From Macrostomum lignano (taxonomy: Eukaryota), in assembly GCA_002269645.1 (NCBI GenBank), contig NIVC01000989.1, forward strand, positions 1 through 64,000: DNA of 64,000 nt, written 5' to 3'. The notes beneath the pieces were generated by a model. That model did not search any database. It was not told the origin of the DNA and was given only the letters and a program-made list of their open reading frames with translations. Both the position numbers and the translations under genes were made by a program. Shown in pieces: positions 14,810-54,607 of the stretch (the stretch's first letter is position 1; each line of letters opens with the position of its first letter).

Positions 14810-15532
14810 ATGTCTCTCCACAGTCTGCCCTCAGCAACTCCAAACGCCACCGATCACCGCTCCTCATTCGTCTCCTGCTCCGTCAGCAGCCCCTACAAAC
14901 TCTCCCATCGCCTGCTGCTCGCCTCCCTCGGCTCTCTGCTTGCCGGCTACGTAACCTTCGTCAACGCGGCCATCTTTGCCGTCTTCCTTCGCGACCGCAG
15001 CGTCCACCGCGTCCCCGGTCACGTGTTCATCGTCGGCCTGATGGTGAGCAGCGACATTCTTGTTGGCATGCTGGCTCTGCCGGGCTACCTGGTGAGAACC
15101 CTGTGCGGTGGCTGGCCGCTGCCGAAATGGTCCTGCGACCTGTGGATCACGGTGGACTACATCAGCACTAACGTTGGCATGCTGAGCGTGACCACTGTTG
15201 CTTTCGACAGATTTTTAGCTACTAACTTTGTGTTCCTGCACAAGCGATGGATGCACCGCGCCAATCAGCTCCGTCTGTGCGCCGCGGTGTGGCTCGTCAC
15301 CTCCGCCAGGTGCATCGCCACCTTCCCCATGTGGGCCGTGCTGTCCGGCTTCCGGGCCAGGGAGGCTTTCGGTGCCTGCGGCCATCCGATTTACCAGGAC
15401 ACCGCGGCGGGCATTGCACACCGGACGGTGGCCTTGTACATCCCCATCGTGCTGCTGGTCTTTTTTTACGGCGCTGTGGTCTTCCGCATTCTCAAGTCCT
15501 CTCGCGCTTTTGGTGCCACTTCGACCAACGCG
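14810..15532 (+). CDS. Class A GPCR, aminergic/muscarinic-like, exon 1 (TM1-TM5)
   Basis: N-glycosylation NAT, TM1 N, TM2 SDILVG, ECL1 WPLPKWSCDLW, TM3 Asp in VDY, DRF motif. Phase-0 donor GTGAGT at 15533. Confidence 0.9.
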
Positions 15533-15547
15533 GTGAGTCTTGGATAT

Positions 15548-16007
<460 letters not shown>

Positions 16008-18268: not shown

Positions 18269-18334
18269 CTAGGAAGCGAAGCGTCTTAAAAGTCTTTCAA
18301 ATCAAGTCGTTCACCCACTAAAACCTGATTGCAG

Positions 18335-18973
18335 GCTCGTCAGTCAAGAAGCCCCAATCACCGCTTGGCTGCTGCAGCCTCCTCGCTGCAGGAGAGCTGC
18401 GTGGACACCGCTTCGCAGTCGCTAATAGCTACAGCTGGTGGCAGCGGAGTTAACAGCCGACTCTCCCGTCAGCATGCCGGCGTACATGGACGTCGAAGTT
18501 CAACCCTGGCCAACCGACTAGTGAAATCGTTCCGCATTGTCACCTGCGTACTGATCTCCTTCCTGCTCACCAATATGCCCTGGCAAGTGGTTGAGAACAT
18601 GATCGTCACAGGGACAACCAACCTGACCAGCACAGATTGGCTCTACGTCCTGTTCTGGATACTCAGCTACATGAACGCGTTTCTGAATCCTCTGTTCTAC
18701 TGTTTTATGAACAAAGGATACCGACTGGCCATTGCGCGCTTTCTGAGGTGTCAGTCTGGCCAGCAGCAACTGCAGCATCAGCAGCTTCAGCATTTACTGC
18801 AGCAGCATCACCAGCTGAACCATCAGAGCAGCGGAGGAGGTACTGCAGCAGCTGCTGCACATGGATCTCAACCACAGAAGCCACACCGCCTGGCCTCAGA
18901 TGGTTCAGCAGTGAAGACGCACCCGCGGTCTTACAATAGAGTTGTTCATCTGGCTAGAGGTTCGGCTCCGTGA
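18335..18973 (+). CDS. Class A GPCR exon 2 (ICL3 end, TM6, TM7, C-tail)
   Basis: Acceptor TTGCAG ends at 18334 in phase 0, matching exon 1. TM6 SFRIVTCVLISFLLTNMPWQV and TM7 SYMNAFLNPLFY (NPxxY) follow. The joined protein is 453 aa; AATAAA lies at 19023. Confidence 0.88.
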   Translation, partial: ARQSRSPNHRLAAAASSLQESCVDTASQSLIATAGGSGVNSRLSRQHAGVHGRRSSTLANRLVKSFRIVTCVLISFLLTNMPWQVVENMIVTGTTNLTSTDWLYVLFWILSYMNAFLNPLFYCFMNKGYRLAIARFLRCQSGQQQLQHQQLQHLLQQHHQLNHQSSGGGTAAAAAHGSQPQKPHRLASDGSAVKTHPRSYNRVVHLARGSAP

Positions 18974-31180: not shown

Positions 31181-31744
31181 TCAAGCGCCACTTTGACTGT
31201 CAAACACTCGCTTATGAGCGGTCACTTTAGGCAGAATCTGATCAATACGATCAACGCCGAGCACCGTCATGAGGCTCTTAACGAGCTCTTCAAACACCGG
31301 AAAAAATTGGTCGTATTCTTCTAGTCGATCGAACGCTAGTTGGACATCCTCGTGACTGAAAATCTCTTGGATTTTATCGTTGACAGCCAACCTTTCGAGT
31401 TGCATCAGCCGGTCAACAGCGCTGACCACAGCTTCCATGGGAGTTTGTTCAACAAATCCCAGGGACTCTTTAATACTGTTCATAGCGTTGCGACAGACGC
31501 CCAACTCTGTGTAGATTGAATTCATTTTCGTGCAAACTCCCGACAACTGAGCAACGTCGAATAGCCTACGGAAATGATCCACCATGCCGAGGAGCATCGA
31601 ATGAGGCGGCTGCTGCTGGGAACCGGAAGCTCCAGCTGAATCACTACTAGCGACACCATTCAAGTCTGTTGGAGCCAGCTCATAATTCTCGTCCGATGCC
31701 ATTCGATCGATTGCGGCGATCAAGCTGACCGTGTCTGGGGCGGC
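31181..31744 (-). CDS. CEP70: Centrosomal protein 70, terminal exon
   Basis: HFRRLFDVAQLSGVCTKMNSIYTELG...LEEYDQFFPVFEELV matches the CEP70 C-terminal region. CTTCTCCAG acceptor in phase 0. Confidence 0.88.
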   Translation of the reverse strand, partial: AAPDTVSLIAAIDRMASDENYELAPTDLNGVASSDSAGASGSQQQPPHSMLLGMVDHFRRLFDVAQLSGVCTKMNSIYTELGVCRNAMNSIKESLGFVEQTPMEAVVSAVDRLMQLERLAVNDKIQEIFSHEDVQLAFDRLEEYDQFFPVFEELVKSLMTVLGVDRIDQILPKVTAHKRVFDSQSGA

Positions 31745-31764
31745 CTGGAGAAGAGGTAGTTATA

Positions 31765-32712
31765 TAGGGGGTTTAGAAGCGAATATTCAGGTGGGTTTAG
31801 GGGCGGATATCGAGATGAGTTTAGGGGCGGATATCGAGATGAGTTTAGGGGCGGATATCGAGATGAGTTTAGGGGCGGATATCGAGATGAGTTTAGGGGC
31901 GGATATCGAGATGAGTTTAGGGGCGGATATCGAGATGAGTTTAGGGGCGGATATCGAGATGAGTTTAGGGGCGGATATCGAGATGAGTTTAGGGGCGGAT
32001 ATCGAGATGAGTTTAGGGGCGGATATCGAGATGAGTTTAGGGGCGGATATCGAGATGAGTTTAGGAGCGGCTATTCAGGTGGGTTTAGGGGCGGATATCC
32101 ATGTGGGTTTAGGGGCGGATATCCATGTGGGTTTAGGGGCGGATATCCATGTGGGTTTAGGGGCGGATATCCATGTGGGTTTAGGGGCGGATATCCATGT
32201 AGGTTTAGGGGCGGATATCCATGTGGGTTTAGGGGCGGATATCCATGTAGGTTTAGGGGCGGATATCCATGTAGGTTTAGGGGCGGATATCCATGTGGGT
32301 TTAGGGGCGGATATCCATGTGGGTTTAGGGGCGGATATTTAGGTAGGTTTAGGGGCGGATATCCATGTAGGTTTAGGGGCGGATATCCATGGGGTTTAGG
32401 GGCCGATATCGAGATGGGTTTAGAAGCGGATATAGCGAGGTTTAGGGGCGGATATACAGTTGGCTTTAAGGGTGGATATCCCGGTGGGTTTAGGGGTGGA
32501 TATCCAGGTGGGTTTAGGTGCGGATATCCAGGGGGGTTTAGGGGCGGATATCTAGGTAGGTTTAGGCGCGAACATCTAGGTAGGTTTAGGGGCGGATATC
32601 CAGTTGGCTTTAAGGGTGGATATCCAGGTGGGTTTAGGGTCAGGGGTTTTAGGGGTGGATATCTAGGTGGGTTTAGGTGTGGATATCCAAGGGGTTTAAG
32701 GGCGGATATCGA
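31765..32712. repeat. 24-bp minisatellite filling CEP70 intron 3
   Basis: Tandem gtttaggggcggatatc(gagatga/catgtgg) units, in two subarrays plus a degenerate end. Confidence 0.95.
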
Positions 32713-32807
32713 TAAGTCAGATGTCTTTATAGAATCTTTATAGTATTAAAACATGCAAAATATTTACAGTACAGTGTACTGTACAGGAGGGTCAATAAAA
32801 TTCCCAC

Positions 32808-33489
32808 CTGTAGTTTTTCCACAGCCGACCAAGGATACAGTTGCATAAACAGGCGCTCCAAGGACTGCTGCAACTCTGGGAGCCGGATCAGCTGATCCCT
32901 CCACTGCTCCAGTACCGGAACCAGAAGGTTAACGCGATCTTTACTCTTCTGCGACTGATTGACAGATTTTTGCTGTTGATGTTGCTGAAGAAGATGCTGG
33001 GACGCTTCATCATCGAGTACAATGGCCTGTATCTTGGCCACTATAGGATGCGCAATGCCGTATGCATCCGATATGCTGACCAAATCTGTCAGAGCCTCGC
33101 GCAGCTGTTTCAGATCTTCGATGCCCAGCAGTCTGGCTGCGTCCTTGAGGTGTTTCTGGCACACCGACAATGGCAGCAGGTCGATGTCTTCCACTCGGGT
33201 GCTGAAATCTCGACCAGCTGCCGCCGTTGATGCCTCTTTGCCGATGTCGATGTTGTGCCGGCGAAGAAGTCGCTCGCATCGTTGCAGTTTCGACATCAGC
33301 AGTACGTGGTCGCTGTTGGTTGGCCGGGACTCCAGCTCGGTGCACAGCAGGTCGCGCTCGCTCTCTATGGACTGCAGCTGGTCCGTGAGGCTGGCGATCT
33401 GCCGGTTCAGCTGCTCGATGGTGACGCGGTAGCCTCGGCCCGGGACTGCCTGCAGGAGGTCCTCGGAGCCTCCGTCTGCTGCTGCTGCT
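32808..33489 (-). CDS. CEP70: CEP70 coding exon 3, 3' part (downstream of the retroelement)
   Basis: (A)n-DGGSEDLL...ELESRPTNSDHVLLMSKLQ... coiled coil. GTGGGA donor at 32807. Confidence 0.8.
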
Positions 33490-35117
33490 GTTGTTGTTGT
33501 TGTTGTTTTGGTGGTACGCGCCCAGGCAGAGCTAAGGGCAGTGTCTGGCCAGCGCTATCAACCCGAGGGGGTCGGCGGAAATGCTGCTGATGTCTGTCGT
33601 GGGTCCTCCAAGAAGGCGGAGCCTGGTGCCGGCGAGAGCTGGGCAGTCAAGCCAGTGTTCCAGGTCATCGCAGGGATGGCCGCAGCGGTGACATGCTGGG
33701 TCGACGGCCGGGTCGACAATGCTGCGATACGCGTTGAAAAGAGTGCAGTGACCTGAGCGTAAGCGCGCAAGAAGCACCGCATCGGCACGGTTGGTGATGG
33801 AGTCCTCTTCCAATTGACGGTTGAGAAGCCGGTACGCGTGCCGGGTGCGCTCGTGGCGTATCGGGGGATCGAGGACGGATCTTCTGATGACGTTTTTGGC
33901 GCTGTGGATGCTGATCTGACTAGCGGGAGACACGAGCGTGGTGGCCTCTTTGGCTGCTTGGTCGGCCAGCTCGTTGCCAGGAATATTCTGGTGGCCCGGA
34001 ACCCACTGCCAGGTGATTTCGGCAGATGCAGTAGGTAGTGCAGATCTGATTCTGGGGTTGCCGCTGGCCAGAGCGCGGAGCATAGATTGGCTGTCTGAGC
34101 AGATGTTGGTAGCCGCGGTGAGAGCAGCTTGGTTGATCCAGCCGATGGCGAGAGAGGCGGCGCGAAGCTCCTCTTCGAACGAGGATGTGGAGGGCGCGCC
34201 GCGCTGTTGAAGAGTCGCCAGGATGATAGGGTGGGCTGGGTCACCGGTCGTGACGATGGCTGAGGCGCCGCCATTGGTCGTGCCGCCTGATGCCGAGCCG
34301 TCGCAGTAGATGGTGATCAGGCCTGGGAGGTGGCGGATAGTGTCGATGGCCGTGGCAGTGCGCGCGGGACCGGGTTCCGGCAACGCCATGTCGACACGCA
34401 CGTCGGTAGAGAAAGGGTCCCAAGGCGGCGGACGAGCAGTGCAGATCATGGCGCGCGGCGTGACCGAGCTAGCAATGAGTGGCAGCAGGTCGGTGACGTG
34501 GTTCCGCCAACTGTTCCTGCGTAGCCTGTGCGCTGTGTTTCCAGTGGCGGCAATGCGGCACGGGTGAGAATCCGGGAGGCGCTGAGCTCTTTCGAAGGCC
34601 GTCAGGCATATAACATTGCTACCAGTGCGGACGGAGCAGATGCCAGCTTCCAGCCTAAGGGCCTCAACCGGAGTCGTGCGGTGTTGTCCTGTGACAATAC
34701 GAAGGGCTGCGTTCTGCGCTCTCTCCAGCTGTTGAAACGCGGATTCAGAGAGCCAAGGGTGCCAGGCCGGCGCAGCGAAGTTAATGATGCTAAGTTGCAT
34801 GGCACGGTAAATGCGGAGCAGGAGTTTTTTGGACCATCCCCATTCCTTGGAGGCCAGGCAGGCGAGGAGACGGCATCGGGAAGTGGTCCGATTGCACACG
34901 TGCTCCAGATGACTGCGGAAACTCAGAGTGCGGTCCAGTGTGAGGCCCAGCAGCCGCCGATCAGCCCCATAGGGTTGGTGCACCTTCTGGTGCGGTCAAA
35001 GGAGCTGCCTCATCGCGGCGACCCGGTTTTAACACCAAAGCTCCTAAGTCGTGGTCTTCAACCCATCTGCCCTCGCGTGCCTTCGGCACGGCTGGCAGGG
35101 AGACCGGTTGTTTTTTT
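33490..35117 (-). mobile_element. Truncated or internally deleted non-LTR retrotransposon of the I group (Ingi/I-like) with RNase H and a (CAA)n tail
   Basis: The 483-aa ORF has the RT C-terminus (LLGLTLDRTLSF, WGW), RNase H (IYCDGS, E-LRA, SDSQS, WVPGH..GNELAD) and a C-terminal CxxC...H...C finger after RLRSGH. The 3' tail is AAAAC(AAC)5, and an (AGC)4 duplication flanks both ends. Confidence 0.92.
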
Positions 35118-35181
35118 GCTGCTGCTGCTGCTGCTGAGGTTGGCGCGGCCGACGATTCTGAGCCGGCTTCTTCAGGGATGC
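35118..35181 (-). CDS. CEP70: CEP70 coding exon 3, 5' part (upstream of the retroelement)
   Basis: AG acceptor at 35182-35183 in phase 1, matching the previous exon. Encodes GIPEEAGSESSAAPTSAAAAAA. Confidence 0.72.
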
Positions 35182-35182
35182 C

Positions 35183-35183
<1 letters not shown>

Positions 35184-35229
<46 letters not shown>

Positions 35230-35254
35230 CTTGATTGATTGATTGATTGGTTGC

Positions 35255-35328
<74 letters not shown>

Positions 35329-35353
35329 TGTTGCTTGATTGGGTGGTTGATTA

Positions 35354-35385
<32 letters not shown>

Positions 35386-35506
35386 CTTGATTGGGTGGTT
35401 GATTAATTGATTGATTGATTGATGGCTTGATTGGTTGATTAATTGATTGATTGATTGATGGCTTGATTGGTTGATTGATTGATTGGTTGATTGATTGATT
35501 GGTGGC

Positions 35507-35541
<35 letters not shown>

Positions 35542-36146
35542 ACTGATTGATTGATTGATTGATTGATCGATTGATTAATTTATTAATTGATTGACGGCTT
35601 GATTGGTTGATTGATTGATTGATTGATTGATTAGTTGCTTGATTGGGTGGTTGATTAATTTATTAATTGATTGATGGCTTGATTGGTTGATTGATTGATG
35701 GCTTGATTGATTGATTGATTGATTGATTGATGGATTGATTGACTGATTGATTGACTGATTGATTGATTAATTGATTGATTGGTTGCTTGATTGGGTGGTT
35801 GATTAATTTATTAATTGATTGATGGTTTGATTGGTTGATTGATTGATTGGTTGATTGATTGATTGATTGATTGATTGATGGATTGATTGACTGATTGATT
35901 GACTGATTGATTGATTAATTGATTGATTGGTTGCTTGATTGGGTGGTTGATTAATTTATTAATTGATTGATGGTTTGATTGGTTGATTGATTGATTGGTT
36001 GATTGATTGATTGATTGATTGATTGATGGATTGATTGACTGATTGATTGACTGATTGATTGATTAATTGATTGATTGGTTGTTTGATTGGGTGGTTGATT
36101 AATTTATTAATTGATTGATGGCTTGATTGGTTGATTGATTTATTGG

Positions 36147-36180
<34 letters not shown>

Positions 36181-36234
36181 AGTTGCTTGATTGGGTGGTT
36201 GATTAATTTATTAATTGATTGATGGCTTGATTGG

Positions 36235-36271
<37 letters not shown>

Positions 36272-36330
36272 GGATTGATTGATGGATTGATTGACTGATT
36301 GATTGACTGATTGATTGATTAATTGATTGA
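35184..36330. repeat. Degenerate (GATT)n array filling CEP70 intron 2
   Basis: Tetranucleotide array with higher-order variant blocks, directly abutting the acceptor. Confidence 0.95.
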
Positions 36331-36387
36331 CTATCACATTAACGCATTCTAATCAGACCAGCTGTCATATCACTAAAAGCAGCTCAC

Positions 36388-36766
36388 CGCAGGCCTGCAG
36401 TTCCAGCCGCATCCGATGCAGCTGAGTCTCGTAGCTGTCAATAATATCCAGCATCCGGTTGTCCATCGGGGAGTTTTTTGTCGGCTTGCGCTGCTTTAAA
36501 CTGCGAAAAATTTCCAACTGCCGTTTGTGCCGTTCGGCTTCAGTCCGCTCGGAGTCATGCAGCTTCCGGCGTAGGCGGCTGATCTCCGCCGCCTGCGACT
36601 CCACCCGCGACTCCAGAGCTTTGGCACGGCTATTGGCCACCGACTTGGAGTTGAGCAGTTCTGCTTCGCGATTCGATGATGAAGCATTCGAAACTGAGGC
36701 GGGTAGCAACAGCGAGTCCGGCACTGAGTCAAGGAAGTTCGAGGAGCGAGCCGAGTCCAACGAGGA
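36388..36766 (-). CDS. CEP70: CEP70 coding exon 2
   Basis: MDNRMLDIIDSYETQL matches CEP70 LDRQLLCLIDYYESKI. TTCTTCAG acceptor in phase 0; GTGAGC donor in phase 1. Confidence 0.85.
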
Positions 36767-36837
36767 CTGAAGATTAGGGGAAAAATATTTTTGAATGATT
36801 TTTTATACCCTTACAATCTCAATTACCGTCTAGCCCA

Positions 36838-38262
36838 GAAATCCACCCCTATTTCCACTTAGGAAGCTTCCATCAATCCATGGAAATCCGCCCCTATTTC
36901 CACCCAGGAAGCTTCCATCAATCCATGGAAATCCGCCCCTAGTTCCACTCAGGAAGCTTCCATCAATCCATGGAAATCCGCCCCTATTTCCACCCAGGAA
37001 GCTTCCATCAATCCATGGAAATCCGCCCCTAGTTCCACTCAGGAAGCTTCCATCAATCCATGGAAATCCGCCCCTATTTCCACTCAGGAAGCTTCCATCA
37101 ATCCATGGAAATCCGCCCCTATTTCCACCCAGGAAGCTTCCATCAATCCATGGAAATCCGTCCCTATTTCCACCCAGGAAGCTTCCATCAATCCATGGAA
37201 ATTCGCCCCTATTTCCACCCAGGAAGCTTCCATCAACCCATGGAAATCCGCCCCTATTTCCACTCAGGAAGCTTCCATCAACCCTTGGAAATCCGCCCCT
37301 ATTTCCACCCAGTAAGCTTCCATCAATCTATGGAAATCCGCCCCTATTTCCACCCAGGAAGCTTCCATCAATCAATGGAAATCCGCCCCTAGTTCCACTC
37401 AGGAAGCTTCCATCAATCTATGGAAATCCGCCCCTATTTCCACCCAGGAAGCTTCCATCAATCAATGGAAATCCGCCCCTAGTTCCACTCAGGAAGCTTC
37501 CATCAATCCATGGAAATCCGCCCCTATTTCCACTTAGGAAGCTTCCATCAATCTATGGAAATCCGCCCCTATTTCCACCCAGGAAGCTTCCATCAATCCA
37601 TGGAAATCCGCCCCTATTTCCACTTAGGAAGCTTCCATCAACCCATGGAAATCGGCCCCTATTTCCACTCAGGAAGCTTCCATCAACCCTTGGAAATTCG
37701 CCCCTATTTCCACCCAGGAAGCTTCCATCAATCCATGGAAATCCGCCCCTAGTTCCACTCAGGAAGCTTCCATCAATCCATGGAAAAATGCCCCTATTTC
37801 CACTCAGGAAGCTTCCATCAATCCATGGAAATCCGCCCCTATTTCCACCCAGGAAGCTTCCATCAATCCATGGAAATCCGCCCCTATTTCCACCCAGGAA
37901 GCTTCCATCAATCCATGGAAATCCGCCCCTAGTTCCACTCAGGAAGCTTCCATCAATCCATGGAAAAATGCCCCTATTTCCACTCAGGAAGCTTCCATCA
38001 ATCCATGGAAATCCGCCCCTATTTCCACCCAGGAAGCTTCCATCAATCCATGGAAATCCGCCCCTATTTCCACCCAGGAAGCTTCCATCAATCCATGGAA
38101 ATCCGCCCCTATTTCCACTTAGGAAGCTTCCATCAACCCATGGAAATCGGCCCCTATTTCCACTCAGGAAGCTTCCATCAACCCTTGGAAATTCGCCACT
38201 AGTTCCACTCAGGAAGCCTCCATCAACCCTTGGAAATCCGCCCCTATTTCCACCCAGGAAGC
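36838..38262. repeat. 45-bp minisatellite filling CEP70 intron 1
   Basis: Tandem atccgcccctatttccacccaggaagcttccatcaatccatggaa. Confidence 0.96.
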
Positions 38263-38346
38263 TAGGAAATCCTAGGAAATATCAAGCACCTCTAACACAG
38301 CTACTTTTTCTTAGAAATCAGCCCCTTGAAACTAATTCTCATTTAC

Positions 38347-38685
38347 CTGTTGCAATGAGGCCAGCTTCTCTCTATACAGCTGCATCTTTTCTTGGCTGTA
38401 TCTCAAGTCAGCCCGAGCATGCCGCTCGGCCTCTTCCAGTCGGTCAATGCTAGCTTGCCTCTGGTCTGATTCGTTGCACAGATCCAGCAGCCAAGTTCGA
38501 GCCAAGCGTGACAGGTTGATCGGCATGCAGACACCTTTGAGAGTCCAAGACAGTCGTTCATTCCTTGGCAGTTCGATGCCCTGACGATTGCTGAGCAGTC
38601 TCAGAGCTCGCTGCCACAGTTGGCACTCATCATCGAGTTGTTCGCCAAGATTGCCGGCTGTTGCTGGTGCTCCATTGGCGCTCAT
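38347..38685 (-). CDS. CEP70: CEP70 coding exon 1
   Basis: ATG at 38685 is preceded by an acceptor at 38692-38693. ECQLWQRALRLL...GIE resembles the CEP70 N-terminus. GTAAAT donor in phase 0. Confidence 0.72.
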
Positions 38686-41707: not shown

Positions 41708-44566
41708 ATGACAAGGCAGTTTCTACTAACAGTCTTTGTTCTTGCAGTCGCTGTTTGTGCATCGTACTGCTTGCAATCTACTTTCGATGCGACAATTGAC
41801 GAAGACATACCGCAGGATTCTGAGCTGCCCGACTCGAGAATACTACTGCACAACAATGGCATCGATTCGAACTCTTATCAACTGCTGCCGCACCCCTACG
41901 TGACATTCGACAAGGAATCCGGTTTACTAAAAGCCAAGAAGACACTCGATCGAGATGTTATGTGTCAAAATGATAAACTTTGCTGCGAAAATGACAGATT
42001 AATCTGTCAGTTGGACCTGACATTTATTAGCCACCGGACAACCCCGCTGCAGAGAAAAGTTCTCCGCGTCGGGCTAAGAGATCGAAACGATCATACTCCG
42101 CGCTTCGAGACGGCTTCAAAGGCGTTCTTCATTCCGGAGGACACTCAGCCTGGACACTTGGAACGGTTGCCAGTGGCAACGGACTTGGACTCGGACGAGA
42201 ATGCGGTGCAGCGGTACATTCTCATGCCAGACAGCTCGCCGTTCGGTCTAAAACACGAGAGCTCGCGCAGTCGCGGCAGTCGAGCAAACGGTCAGCTCTG
42301 GTTGGAGCTGAAGACGCCGCTTGACCGAGAGACCACAGCCTCGTACGAATTCGTTTTGACAGCGATCGATTCCGGAGAGCAGAAAGGCAGCACGCGGATC
42401 ATTGTCAACGTGACAGATCGCAACGATATTTATCCGCATTTCGAGCGCAGCAGCTCCAGAGGCCAGACAATACGATTGCTTGAGAGTAGGAAACCCAACG
42501 CTATCGTTGCTCGAGTTGTTGCTAAGGACGAAGACGAAGGTGTCAATGCTGAGATTCTGTACGAGTTGGACCCGCATCAGGCCGATCTGAGCGCCATCCA
42601 GCGACACTTCCGGGTCGATTCTACTCGTAGCACCGGAAATGTTGTGCTAATACGCCAGCTGGACTATGAAGAGGCAACAGAGTACAAGCTGGCTATTATT
42701 GCTCGAAATAGAGTGCCATACAGTACTCGCAACCGACTCTCAACTGCTACCGTGACTATCATTGTGCTTGACGAGAATGACGAAACTCCTGTAGTCAGCG
42801 TGCACTACTTGACAGACGAAGGTCAGCACATGGTCAGCATAGTGGAGAACCAAGTGGAATCAATGACGGTAGCAATAATAACTCCAGCTGACCGAGACAA
42901 GGGACTCAACGGCCAGGTTACGTGTGAAATTCTTGACACCAAAGATCGGGAACACTTCACTTTGAAGAAAATTTTGCCAGGAGTCGAGTACTACTTGCGC
43001 ACTAAAACTGGACATGGACTGGATCGCGAAGAGTTTCTGAGAAACCCATCTATCAACCCATCGGTAACCGAGGTCCAAATCAAAGTGCGGATAATGTGCA
43101 GCGATCACGGTACGCCGCAGAGAAGTGCAAACACGAGTGTCAACATCCGCATTCTGGACCTCAACGATAACAGTCCAGTGCTCAAGGTGCACGCTGTGCT
43201 CGGGAAAAGCTCGCTAAGCGACGCTAAAACAGTCGAAATCGCTGAGAACCTGTCGCCAAATACAGTTTTCGCGACAGTAAGCGCGCTGGATCCGGACTAT
43301 CGGGAAAACGGCACAGTGGTGTTCTCAATGGACCAACAGAATTTGTATCCGTTTGAGGCTTTCGGTATCTATAATAATGGCCATATTTTCATCCGGCGGG
43401 CGCTGGATCGAGAAACGCTCAACCTACCTGGCGACCTTTTTCAAATAGTTGTAGTTGCTCGAGACAAAGGCACGCCGGCCAGGTCCAACTCGATTAACCT
43501 GGAGATTCGTCTCAAAGACGTGAACGACAACAAGCCCCAGATGGAGCAGCGCATGACTTTCACGGTGTTTGAGAACAACTCGCCTGGATATCCTATCGGC
43601 GAGATTAACGTCACCGATCCCGACAAGGTTGGCCAACTTTCCTTGACGTTGCAGCCTCTGAGATTGCTGGATCGACTGCCGTTTCAAGTACTTGAAGAGC
43701 ACGGCAGGTTCTATCTGCAGGCTACTGACAGCTTGGACAGCGAGAGGGTGAGTGAGTTCCAGTTCCTGCTGGTGGCCAGGGATGCCGGTCACGGTTCGGC
43801 TGGACACACGGTCACCAGCACGGTGACCGTAGTTGTTCAGGACGTCAATGACCACTCGCCGCAGATTGTGTACCCCTGCAATGGTAAAGCGCGTCGGTAT
43901 AACCACACAGTCTCTTGGAAAGAGGGCATCGGACACACGGTGGTGAAAGTTAATGCCAAGGACGATGATCATGACAAAATGACTAACGGGCGCCTTCAAT
44001 TCAGCATGCTACGAAATAGCCTGTTCAAGATTGACGAAGACACTGGCGAGGTGCAAGTGGCCGTGAAAATGGACTACAGAAGCATCGGGCCAAAGCTTGT
44101 CACCGTGGTGGCCAAGGATCATGGCAAGCCGAAGAGTCTGAGCTCCACCTGCGAATTCTTCATCCTCGTTGACGACTCGGTGCCGTACAGTCGAGTGGTA
44201 GACAGCGGAGGTGGGAGCAGAACGCGCAATCCGTTAAACGGTGTCAGACGCGACGGTGACGTCATCAATCGCGGCTCCCTGCTGACTGACTCGAGCGTTC
44301 TAGCCGCGATAGCGGTCTTTGTCTGCCTCCTTCTGCTGGCCACTCTGCTGTTGTTTCTGTACGCCAGGCACTGGCACAGGACGCCGGAGTTTCTGCCGGA
44401 CCTGCTCGAGCCGTGTCTGGGGCCGGTGCAGCCTGCGGCGACAATCAAGCACAGCGCCGAGGCTGGCGAGGAGATTCAACAGGCGTCCTCGACACTACAG
44501 CCAGGCTCGCGGAGGCTGCTGTCTACTGGAGGGACTTTCGGCAAGGCGGGAGGCGATCTGACTGAG
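41708..44566 (+). CDS. Protocadherin (delta-like, 7 cadherin repeats), large exon 1: signal peptide, ectodomain, TM
   Basis: Signal peptide, Cys-containing EC1 (LDRDVMC..CC..C), six DxND-type linkers plus a seventh EC, and TM VLAAIAVFVCLLLLATLLLFLY. GTAAGG donor at 44567, phase 0. Confidence 0.93.
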
Positions 44567-44919
44567 GTAAGGCGTTGCCGTGTTGCCGTGAAAGCGCGTT
44601 GATAAGTTGCTGGATGGTCTTTTAGGGTGAGCTAAAGGAAAGATCGTAGGCAGAATGGATGAATAGAAACTTATGTAAACCAGATGTTTCTGCCTAGCAG
44701 GTGTTTTAGACTTCGAACAGAAAGAGACACTCTGGAGACCCAAAATGAAAAGTTCCAATCCGATACGAACAACTGAGAAAGAGACTGCCACAGATGGCTA
44801 AATAGAACCTTAGTTTGTTTAATCAATGTCCTATTTTCGCGCAAATTTAAACTACAAGTAGCTGACGAGCTTGAGTGGCACCTGTCTAGCATTATCCGAG
44901 AGACTTTCTCATCTAACAG

Positions 44920-49567: not shown

Positions 49568-49670
49568 GTTCAGCAGCAGCAGCAGCAGCAGCAGCTGTCT
49601 ATTTACCAGTCGATGTCTCCACCCAGAAGACAGATTTATGGCGGCGTAGGAGCCAGCAGTGCCGCATCAG
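49568..49670 (+). CDS. Protocadherin exon 2 (cytoplasmic, poly-Q)
   Basis: CTTTCAG acceptor in phase 0, VQQQQQQQQLSIYQSM..., GTGAGC donor in phase 1. Phases fit both neighbouring exons. Confidence 0.65.
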
Positions 49671-54080: not shown

Positions 54081-54607
54081 ACTATTATCACTTCAAGGAT
54101 GATCAGCCCAGCGAGCAGCTGCTCAAAACATTCGAGCTCAAGCACTTCGGTCCCGACGTTGTCTACCGAGCATTGCAGCAGGAACCGCCTGCTTCTGCGA
54201 CAGCCGCCGCCGCCGCCGCGGTGACACGATCGCCGTGCAGTCGCTCCAGTCGTCATCAGCCCTACCAGACGCTGATGTACCATCGGCAGAATTCTCAGGC
54301 TAGGAGAGCTACGCTGCGCCACCAGCCGGTCAGCTGCTTTACTGACGCTACCGACGATGCCAATGCGGTGTTCTATCAGCCCGGTAGGAAGTCGCTGCAC
54401 CGGTCGGAGTCCGACCTGCCCGCTGCTAACTCTGGACGGACGTCGCAGAGACGTCAACAGCAGCAGCAGCAGCAACAACAGCAACAACAGCACCAGAAGA
54501 CGTCTTCTTCAGCGTTTCATCGACCAAGTAGAAGCCTTCGCACCATCGATGGCAGCTGGGGCACCCCGCTCAAGCCTTACCCGTCAGTGCAGGCCAGCTA
54601 TGTGTGA
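54081..54607 (+). CDS. Protocadherin terminal exon (cytoplasmic tail)
   Basis: CCCCGCAG acceptor in phase 1, then DYYHFKDDQPSEQ... to TGA at 54607. The three exons sum to an open 1162-aa frame. Confidence 0.7.

What the first reader, a model, noticed from the sequence alone, without database searches (positions are those of the whole stretch)
32808..35181. Retrotransposon inserted into a poly-alanine (GCA)n tract of a CEP70 coding exon
Seen: the exon reads ...PTSAAAAAA, then 1.63 kb of element in the same orientation, then AAAADGGSEDLL.... Removing the element and one (AGC)4 copy restores a 734-nt exon with the right phases and an open 671-aa CEP70. Read-through into the element hits TGA near 34964. 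The rest of the gene has no lesions, so the event is recent. Known: some non-LTR families target microsatellites. Inferred: a CAA-tailed family that may prime on CAG/GCA repeats would act as a mutagen of poly-Q/poly-A coding tracts. This copy of CEP70 is probably null unless another allele or duplicate compensates, or the insert is spliced out using the CAG run.
Basis: partly seen in the sequence, partly recalled or inferred. Interest (0 to 1): 0.7.

Follow-up and report, generated by a model that had tools for sequence, protein, structure and literature searches.

The report
LINE insertion splitting a flatworm CEP70 exon
A 1.6-kb jumping-gene fragment sits inside the alanine-repeat (CAG-run) stretch of one copy of the centrosome gene CEP70 in the flatworm Macrostomum, and relatives of this element in other animals also land repeatedly in CAG runs, so the lineage appears to home in on a repeat type that often lies in protein-coding sequence.

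Summary
On the minus strand, a four-exon gene (38685..31181) encodes an open 671-aa protein once 1626 nt (35116..33491) and 14 nt of duplicated CAG run are removed. That protein is 99% identical to the UniProt Macrostomum lignano CEP70. The UniProt protein reads ...APTSAAAAAADGG... without interruption, which is exactly the predicted empty site.

The insert is a 5'-truncated non-LTR retrotransposon. It carries the C-terminal part of the reverse transcriptase (RT), an RNase H domain, a CCHC motif, a 25-nt 3'UTR and a (CAA)5 tail, in the same orientation as the gene. Read-through stops at TGA 34963..34961.

Among related elements from metagenomes (31-50% aa identity), 7 of 17 CAA-tailed 3' junctions abut two or more CAG units. 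Four 5'-truncated copies carry CAG-run target-site duplications of 9-19 nt. Two different families occupy the same CAGCAGCAA site.

Full-length relatives have an Ingi-like single ORF: 2A motif, APE endonuclease, RT, RNase H. This CEP70 copy is probably null, but an intact near-identical copy exists in a genome known to be heavily duplicated.

Untested: other copies of this family in the host genome, read support for the junctions, and transcripts.

The parts
33491..35116 (-). 5'-truncated non-LTR retrotransposon fragment, 1626 nt, in the same orientation as the gene
   Evidence: Delimited by the CAG-run flanks. There is no second copy in the window. Homology to RT + RNase H proteins runs from about 34974 to 33544.
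33535..34995 (-). Open 487-codon frame of the element: RT C-terminal region, RNase H domain, C-terminal Cys-x2-Cys...His...Cys motif, TAG stop at 33534..33532
   Evidence: Pfam RNase_H PF00075, E 2.4e-13. 44 homologs, best 42% identity, with RVT_1 + RNase_H. Invariant C435, C438 and H447 in alignment A1.
34996..35116 (-). 5' end of the insert: six A's, then element sequence in a different frame from the main ORF. This frame is continuous with CEP70 and ends at TGA 34963..34961.
   Evidence: By eye, the frame-0 peptide RWVEDHDLGALVLKPGRRDE resembles the conserved W...LxLNxxKSE stretch of relatives (consensus). This implies a frameshift or small deletion near 34990.
33491..33531 (-). 3' UTR of 25 nt (CTCTGCCTGGGCGCGTACCACCAAA...) plus the (CAA)5 tail at 33505..33491
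   Evidence: Relatives have the same layout, and L004 shares the motif CTGCYTGGGCG.
35117..35137 (-). Upstream target copy: TCA(GCA)6, which equals (CAG)6CA. This is the host poly-Ala tract and the left copy of the target-site duplication.
   Evidence: The intact paralog or allele P0045 has exactly 6 Ala here.
33476..33490 (-). Downstream target copy: (CAG)5, read as 4 Ala codons plus the G of GAC. It is the right copy of a target-site duplication of up to 14 nt.
   Evidence: Removing 14 nt restores the 6-Ala sequence of P0045.
32808..35181 (-). CEP70 exon 3: 734 nt without the insert, entering in phase 1 and leaving in phase 0
38347..38685 (-). CEP70 exon 1 (ATG at 38685..38683, 113 codons)
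   Evidence: 99% identical to P0045 residues 11-123.
36388..36766 (-). CEP70 exon 2 (379 nt). It includes the LDIIDSYETQL stretch, which is conserved in other CEP70 proteins but absent from the P0045 gene model.
31181..31744 (-). CEP70 exon 4 (187 codons plus TGA), the most conserved part of the protein
   Evidence: Most of the 137 library hits align to residues ~440-663, many only to ~525-663.

Best explanation
One copy of the Macrostomum CEP70 gene was hit by a non-LTR (LINE-type) retrotransposon of an RNase H-bearing, APE-endonuclease lineage with an Ingi-like architecture.

Proposed mechanism (target-primed reverse transcription):
1. The element's endonuclease nicked the antisense strand inside the (GCA)6/(CAG)7 tract that encodes a poly-alanine linker.
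2. The freed ...CTG-3' end paired with the (CAA)n tail of the element RNA. Two of every three bases match, including the terminal ones. This end primed reverse transcription.
3. Copying stopped early, which left a 5' truncation within the RT region.
4. The second-strand cut lay about 14 nt away and produced a CAG-run target-site duplication.

Consequence for the gene: the allele encodes 261 native residues plus 51 element-derived residues and then a stop. It loses the conserved C-terminal 410 residues, so it is most likely null. It is tolerated because a near-identical intact CEP70 copy exists in this duplicated genome.

Shown: the insert, its domains, the flanks, the empty site, and the CAG-run preference of related elements.
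Inferred: the priming and cleavage steps, loss of function, and compensation by the other copy.
For: Anatomy and gene model.

CEP70 identity and intact 6-Ala empty site in P0045.

Element domains and relatives. Full-length relatives have one ORF of ~1460-1530 aa with APE, RT and RNase H domains. Nine of them also carry a GDVExNPGP 2A-like motif.

Lineage behaviour:
- Almost all relatives end in a short 3'UTR followed by a triplet tail, mostly (CAA)n.
- 7 of 17 independent CAA-tailed junctions continue directly into two or more CAG units. The chance expectation is 1/256 per junction, giving a binomial P of 2.6e-13.
- L047, L074, L038 and L004 are truncated at different internal points, yet each has a CAG run on both sides, 9-19 nt long.
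- L012 and L013 come from different families with different tails but sit at the identical site ...|AGCAGCAATAGCGCG.
- L002 has a (GAC)n tail, and its TSD begins with GACGAC.

TSD lengths of 13-19 nt in relatives fit the ≤14 nt seen here. CAG runs cover about 0.1% of the window. Genome redundancy is reported in PMC5730564.
Against: - No other copy of this particular family could be examined. The host genome is not in the searchable collections and the window holds only one copy.
- 6 of 17 CAA-tailed relatives are not next to CAG, and L001 has an ordinary unique-sequence TSD. This is therefore a preference, not strict specificity.
- The tail (CAA) and the target (CAG) are not the same repeat, unlike classic microsatellite-specific LINEs.
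- I cannot separate endonuclease specificity from RNA-DNA annealing.
- No reads or transcripts were available, so the junctions and the null status are unverified.
- The clade (Ingi) was inferred from architecture, not from an RT phylogeny.
Confidence: 0.8

Rival explanations
1. The element inserts at random. The CAG runs next to the tails belong to the element's own composite (CAA)n(CAG)m tail, and landing in the CEP70 poly-Ala tract was a coincidence.
For: Within one family (L038, L047, L074, L006) every copy seen has CAG after CAA, as a composite tail would give. 6 of 17 CAA-tailed copies lack CAG. L001 has a unique-sequence TSD.
Against: The upstream flanks also end in CAG runs at four different truncation points, and these cannot be element sequence. 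In the window, the upstream (GCA)6 is host sequence, as P0045 shows. A random hit inside a CAG run has a chance of about 1e-3. Two families with non-CAA tails share one CAGCAGCAA site.
Confidence: 0.12
2. This is an assembly mis-join: a retrotransposon fragment was placed wrongly between two triplet-repeat ends.
For: Both junctions lie in simple repeats. The genome is repeat-rich, duplicated and hard to assemble (PMC5730564).
Against: The structure carries the full signature of target-primed reverse transcription: a sense-oriented 3' end with UTR and tail, 5' truncation, and a ≤14-nt duplication that restores exactly the sequence of an independent intact copy. An artefact would need two chimeric joins that split one exon precisely.
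Confidence: 0.04
3. The insert is removed from the mRNA, or mostly removed, by cryptic splicing, so the copy still makes a functional CEP70, perhaps slightly longer.
For: The site lies in a non-conserved linker. One in-frame combination exists: a phase-1 donor AAG|GTGCAC at 34983 with CAG| acceptors at 33487..33475. It would leave about 44 extra residues.
Against: The donor is weak. The acceptors follow a CAA run and have no pyrimidine tract, unlike the gene's real acceptors. There is no transcript evidence.
Confidence: 0.08

Closest known systems
Metazoan Ingi-clade LINEs (e.g. Ingi-1_AC of Aplysia; Odon et al. 2013, PMC3708506) within the RNase H-bearing 'I group'
   Same: Full-length relatives have a single long ORF with an N-terminal 2A-like GDVExNPGP motif, APE endonuclease, RT, RNase H and a C-terminal Cys/His motif. 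The window copy keeps the RT C-terminal part, RNase H and CCHC.
   Different: No RT phylogeny against named reference elements was run. The papers I could read describe no triplet tails or CAG-run insertion for Ingi.
Microsatellite-specific non-LTR retrotransposons: Waldo (ACAY)n, Mino (AC)n, Kibi (TC)n, Koshi (TTC)n, Dong (TAA)n, Togen (TG)n (PMC3812793, PMC4640811)
   Same: Insertion inside a simple repeat, with the repeat on both sides of the element and a repeat-like 3' tail. Relatives also form tandem head-to-tail arrays.
   Different: The target here is a CAG trinucleotide run, which those reviews do not list. The tail unit (CAA) differs from the target unit. The preference is partial (about 40% of junctions). 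The listed families belong to the R1, Tx1, R4 and NeSL clades; this lineage has an Ingi-like architecture, but its clade was not determined.
Drosophila I factor, with its (TAA)n tail
   Same: An RNase H-bearing APE-type LINE that ends in a trinucleotide repeat instead of poly(A) (my knowledge of the family, not tested here).
   Different: The I factor has two ORFs and no 2A motif, and it is not known to target CAG runs.
Exonic LINE insertions that create null alleles (e.g. human L1 in coding exons)
   Same: A 5'-truncated sense insertion with a TSD, giving a premature stop inside the insert.
   Different: In this case the insertion site appears to be chosen by its repeat sequence, and a duplicate gene copy probably masks the effect.

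Membership tests
Non-LTR (LINE) retrotransposon, APE type, RNase H-bearing 'I group' | Reverse transcriptase domain | tested here: met
   The window copy keeps only the RT C-terminal region. It aligns to residues ~323-834 of RVT_1-containing proteins P0006 and P0008.
Non-LTR (LINE) retrotransposon, APE type, RNase H-bearing 'I group' | RNase H domain downstream of RT | tested here: met
   Pfam PF00075, E 2.4e-13, residues 227-351 of the insert ORF.
Non-LTR (LINE) retrotransposon, APE type, RNase H-bearing 'I group' | APE-type endonuclease at the N-terminus | tested here: inconclusive
   Absent from the window copy because of 5' truncation. Present in full-length relatives L006 and L011 (Exo_endo_phos, Exo_endo_phos_2).
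Non-LTR (LINE) retrotransposon, APE type, RNase H-bearing 'I group' | No terminal repeats; a 3' simple-repeat or A-rich tail; variable 5' truncation; a target-site duplication | tested here: met
   (CAA)5 tail, truncation within the RT region, and a CAG-run duplication of up to 14 nt. Relatives are truncated at other points.
Ingi clade | Single ORF with an N-terminal 2A-like motif and no ORF1 | tested here: inconclusive
   Seen in relatives: single ORFs of 1463 and 1527 aa, and GDVExNPGP in L013, L016, L018, L023, L024, L034, L036, L042 and L072. Not testable in the truncated window copy.
Ingi clade | Placement of the RT domain inside the clade in a phylogeny with reference elements | not tested
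   No reference set (Repbase/RTclass1) was available, and the homology search returned no hit named for a clade.
Microsatellite-specific LINEs | Most copies flanked on both sides by the same microsatellite | tested here: inconclusive
   7 of 17 CAA-tailed junctions abut two or more CAG units. All five copies with both junctions visible (the window, L004, L038, L047, L074) have CAG on both sides. Six junctions have no CAG. The host-genome family was not sampled.
Microsatellite-specific LINEs | The element's tail is the same repeat as the target | tested here: not met
   The tail is (CAA)n and the target is (CAG)n, so two of three positions are shared.
CEP70 (centrosomal protein of 70 kDa) | Full-length colinear similarity to named CEP70 proteins, including the conserved C-terminal region | tested here: met
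   99% to M. lignano A0A1I8GYG5. E 1e-59 to 1e-46 and 28-30% identity over ~600 residues to CEP70 of Tubulanus, Ptychodera and Rhinophrynus and a full-length Bulinus protein annotated only as 'hypothetical'. There is no Pfam model and no PDB hit.
CEP70 (centrosomal protein of 70 kDa) | Centrosomal localisation and function | not testable with these tools
   Requires experiment.

The most novel reading that the evidence does not exclude
A lineage of Ingi-like, triplet-tailed LINEs, found here in marine and host-associated metagenomes and in one flatworm, preferentially integrates into CAG (and CAA) trinucleotide runs. It would do so through endonuclease choice together with pairing of its tail to the nicked repeat. 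That would make it the first LINE group whose favoured target is the repeat class that encodes poly-Q, poly-A and poly-S tracts. It would then be a systematic source of exon-disrupting alleles, rather than a 'safe-haven' specialist.
Probability: 0.45. Interest if true: 0.7.

Novelty: new variant of a known kind. Interest (0 to 1): 0.55.

Why it matters
Target-specific LINEs are usually explained as parasites that avoid harm by landing in multicopy or non-coding repeats. A lineage that favours CAG runs goes against that logic, because such runs are common in coding exons. The lineage would also add a new triplet target to a short list (ACAY, AC, TC, TTC, TAA, TG). It offers a natural system for asking how far the tail sequence, rather than the endonuclease, chooses the integration site, a question relevant to engineering retrotransposons for targeted insertion. 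For Macrostomum genetics, the finding flags that one CEP70 copy is probably dead and that gene copies in this duplicated genome are not equivalent.

Tried and rejected
- The word-index protein search with exon 3 alone found nothing. Pfam and PDB gave no CEP70 hit. Only the exhaustive HMMER search identified the gene.
- No genomic DNA for P0045 is on record, so I could not make a nucleotide empty-site alignment or estimate dN/dS.
- I looked for other copies of the element in the window and found none.
- I tested whether the CAG targets of relatives lie in coding sequence. The open frames across the reconstructed empty sites are short, which does not support an exon bias.
- A full-length relative used as query returned no hit named for a clade, so the clade could not be named that way.
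- Literature searches for CAA-tailed or CAG-targeting LINEs returned nothing relevant. The Vingi paper (PMC3002237) is not held.
- An apparent 16-nt 'TSD' in L013 and L016 turned out to be an internal coding repeat at the same position in both loci, so I discarded it.

Full report
**1. What is in the sequence.** The feature lies on the minus strand. Reading that strand, an exon begins at 35181 (after AG at 35183/2) and encodes IPEEAGSESSAAPTSAAAAAA. The (GCA)6 tract ends at 35117. A block of 1626 nt follows (35116..33491). It begins AAAAAACAACCGG and ends CCACCAAAA(CAA)5. Immediately after it comes (CAG)5ACGG (33490..33476), which in the gene's frame reads AAAADGGSEDLL, and the exon continues to CAG|GT at 32808. 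Read-through from the poly-Ala tract into the insert stays open for 51 codons and stops at TGA 34963..34961. Removing the insert plus 14 nt of the CAG run leaves a 734-nt exon.

**2. The gene.** I found three further exons on the same strand with canonical splice sites and matching phases:
- 38685..38347, carrying the ATG
- 36766..36388
- 31744..31181, ending in TGA

With the repaired exon 3 they give a 2016-nt CDS of 671 codons without a stop. Pfam, PDB and the word-index search recognised nothing. The exhaustive HMMER search found 137 relatives.

The best hit, P0045, is 99% identical and is UniProt A0A1I8GYG5, 'Centrosomal protein of 70 kDa', Macrostomum lignano. The next hits are CEP70 of Tubulanus, Ptychodera and Rhinophrynus, and a Bulinus protein annotated only as 'hypothetical' (E 1e-59 to 1e-46). 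They are colinear over about 600 residues. The gene is therefore CEP70, and the window comes from Macrostomum lignano or a very close relative. This fits the metazoan neighbours (a 964-aa six-cadherin ORF and a rhodopsin-type GPCR) and the introns filled with tandem repeats (PMC5730564 reports 15% simple and tandem repeats).

**3. The empty site.** P0045 reads ...SESAAAPTSAAAAAADGGSEDLL... with exactly six alanines and no interruption. This is an independent copy. It differs from the window at 6 of 605 aligned residues and in the region upstream of the ATG, so it is more likely a duplicate than the same allele (inference).

P0045 shows that the (GCA)6 tract, which equals (CAG)7 at nucleotide level, existed before the insertion. 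The window carries a duplication of up to 14 nt of that tract. The tract lies in a linker that is not conserved among CEP70 proteins. The window's exon 2 includes the conserved LDIIDxYExQ stretch that the P0045 gene model skips, so the window's model is the better one in that region.

**4. The insert.**
- Positions 34995..33535 are one open 487-codon frame with an RNase H domain (PF00075, 2.4e-13) and a C-terminal Cys/His motif.
- Its 44 database relatives (at most 42% identity) carry RVT_1 plus RNase_H.
- Homology to full-length relatives starts in the last third of the RT region, so the copy is 5'-truncated.
- The first ~120 nt (35116..34996) are in another frame. Translated in that frame they resemble the conserved W...LxLNxxKSE stretch (by eye, against the consensus). 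The copy therefore carries at least one frameshift or small deletion near 34990.
- After the TAG stop come 25 nt of 3'UTR and the (CAA)5 tail.
- No second copy is present in the window.

**5. The lineage.** Full-length relatives (L006, L011) have a single ORF of 1463-1527 aa with APE endonuclease, RT and RNase H. Nine loci carry a canonical 2A-like GDVExNPGP motif followed by a Cys-rich or PHD-like region near the N-terminus (Pfam marks). This combination matches what Odon et al. describe for Ingi-clade elements of animals (PMC3708506). I did not run an RT phylogeny, so 'Ingi-like' is an architectural assignment only.

**6. Does the lineage target CAG runs?** I fetched 88 related loci and read their 3' ends. 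Nearly all have a short 3'UTR (about 5-35 nt) followed by a triplet tail. The tail is most often (CAA)n, and sometimes (CAC)n(CAA)n, (GAC)n, (CGA)n or (GCA)n.

Of 17 independent CAA-tailed junctions (including the window):
- seven continue directly into two or more CAG units: the window, L004, L006, L015, L038, L047, L074
- four continue into one CAG unit
- six continue into none

A further case, L085 ((CAA)6(CAG)3CAACAGCAACAG), was fetched after this tally and is not counted in it.

With a chance expectation of 1/256 per junction, seven of 17 gives P = 2.6e-13.

The CAG runs are target sequence, not tail. L047, L074, L038 and L004 are truncated at different internal positions, yet each has a matching CAG run directly upstream: (CAG)4CAA, CAA(CAG)4CAAC, (CAG)5 and (CAG)3 respectively. 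In the window the upstream run is host coding sequence (section 3).

Two families with different 3'UTRs and tails (L012 with (CGA)n, L013 with (CAC)n) sit at the identical position ...|AGCAGCAATAGCGCGTTTGATAG.

The pairing idea also fits a non-CAG case. L002 has a (GAC)6 tail, and its 15-nt TSD begins CGACGAC.

The preference is not absolute. L001 has a plain 13-nt unique TSD, and several CAA-tailed copies abut unrelated sequence.

Relatives also form head-to-tail arrays (L018, L023, L085-L087), as expected if new copies enter or abut the repeat tails of older ones.

**7. Mechanism.** The best-supported account is target-primed reverse transcription.
- The antisense strand is nicked within the CTG run.
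- The ...CTG-3' end pairs with the CAA tail of the RNA. C:G and A:T pair, including the primer's terminal bases, and the third position mismatches.
- cDNA synthesis stops early.
- A second cut about 14 nt away creates the duplication.

TSD lengths in relatives (13-19 nt) agree with this. Whether the endonuclease or the RNA-DNA pairing chooses the site cannot be decided here. The shared L012/L013 site with non-CAA tails hints that the endonuclease contributes.

**8. Consequence for the gene.** The interrupted copy would give 261 native residues plus 51 foreign residues. It lacks the C-terminal 410 residues, where most cross-species conservation lies. The stop lies far upstream of the last exon junction, so the transcript is also a candidate for nonsense-mediated decay (inference).

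The only in-frame cryptic splice I found uses a weak donor at 34983 and CAG acceptors with no pyrimidine tract. An intact copy exists (P0045). The Mlig_3_7 assembly is described as having 180 Mb of duplicated blocks at least 95% identical, owing to extra large chromosomes (PMC5730564). Compensation by the other copy is therefore likely but not shown.

**9. Comparison with what is known, and novelty.** Microsatellite-targeting LINEs are established: Waldo, Mino, Kibi, Koshi, Dong (PMC3812793), and Togen and some HERO families (PMC4640811). None of the listed targets is CAG or CAA. My searches for such a case found nothing, but Repbase and subscription papers were out of reach.

I therefore rate the exon insertion itself as an ordinary event. 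I rate the lineage-level CAG-run preference as a new variant of a known kind, of moderate interest. It runs against the 'safe target' rationale and gives a testable handle on tail-directed integration.

**10. Limits.**
- No host-genome census of this family was possible.
- No reads or RNA were available.
- There is no nucleotide-level empty site.
- The clade was not placed by phylogeny.
- The source organisms of the metagenomic relatives are unknown.
- The junction tally was made by hand from 17 loci.

Noticed in passing
window 35183..36330, 36838..38263, 31769..32639: Each of the three CEP70 introns consists mostly of a different tandem repeat. Intron 2 is almost entirely (TCAA)n on the gene strand, running right up to the AG acceptor of exon 3. 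Intron 1 holds a 45-mer array and intron 3 a 24-mer array. The exon 3 acceptor therefore has a TCAA repeat in place of a pyrimidine tract.
   Followed up: partly
window 41708..44602 (+): An uninterrupted 964-aa ORF with six cadherin domains (Pfam E 1.7e-66), resembling a single-exon protocadherin. It lies about 3 kb upstream of the CEP70 start, on the opposite strand.
   Followed up: partly
window 14810..15559 and 18329..18973 (+): Two ORFs that match the front and back halves of a rhodopsin-family GPCR (7tm_1). They are probably two exons of one gene separated by repeat-filled intron sequence.
   Followed up: no
window 36388..36766 versus P0045: The UniProt M. lignano CEP70 model lacks about 70 residues (window residues ~168-237) that are conserved in CEP70 of other phyla. 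This is either alternative splicing within exon 2 (GT at 'CGG|GTGGAG', AG at 'CTGCAG|G') or an annotation error.
   Followed up: partly
L012 4474..4561 and L013 4471..4670: Two different element families, from different marine metagenomes, are inserted at exactly the same nucleotide of the same flanking sequence (AGCAGCAATAGCGCGTTTGATAGAGCAG...). This implies a repeated or conserved target whose identity I did not determine.
   Followed up: partly
L018 1447..2170, L023 3279..3720, L085 6547..6900, L086 6475, L087 5164..5339: Related elements occur head-to-tail: the triplet tail of one copy is followed within 200-600 nt by the 5'UTR and 2A motif of another.
   Followed up: partly
L013, L016, L018, L023, L024, L034, L036, L042, L072 (N-terminal regions): Canonical ribosome-skipping 2A-like motifs (GDVE[ENSRV]NPGP, and GDIEANPGP in L023) sit near the start of the single long ORF. 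Each is followed by a Cys-rich segment that some database entries score as PHD.
   Followed up: partly
window 49571..49594 (+) and 54458..54472 (+): These are the only other CAG runs of 4 or more units in the window, (CAG)8 and (CAG)5. Neither carries an insertion.
   Followed up: no
L002, empty-site reconstruction around 5971/7746: On the strand opposite the element, a 325-codon open frame spans the reconstructed empty site. This relative may therefore also interrupt a coding exon.
   Followed up: no
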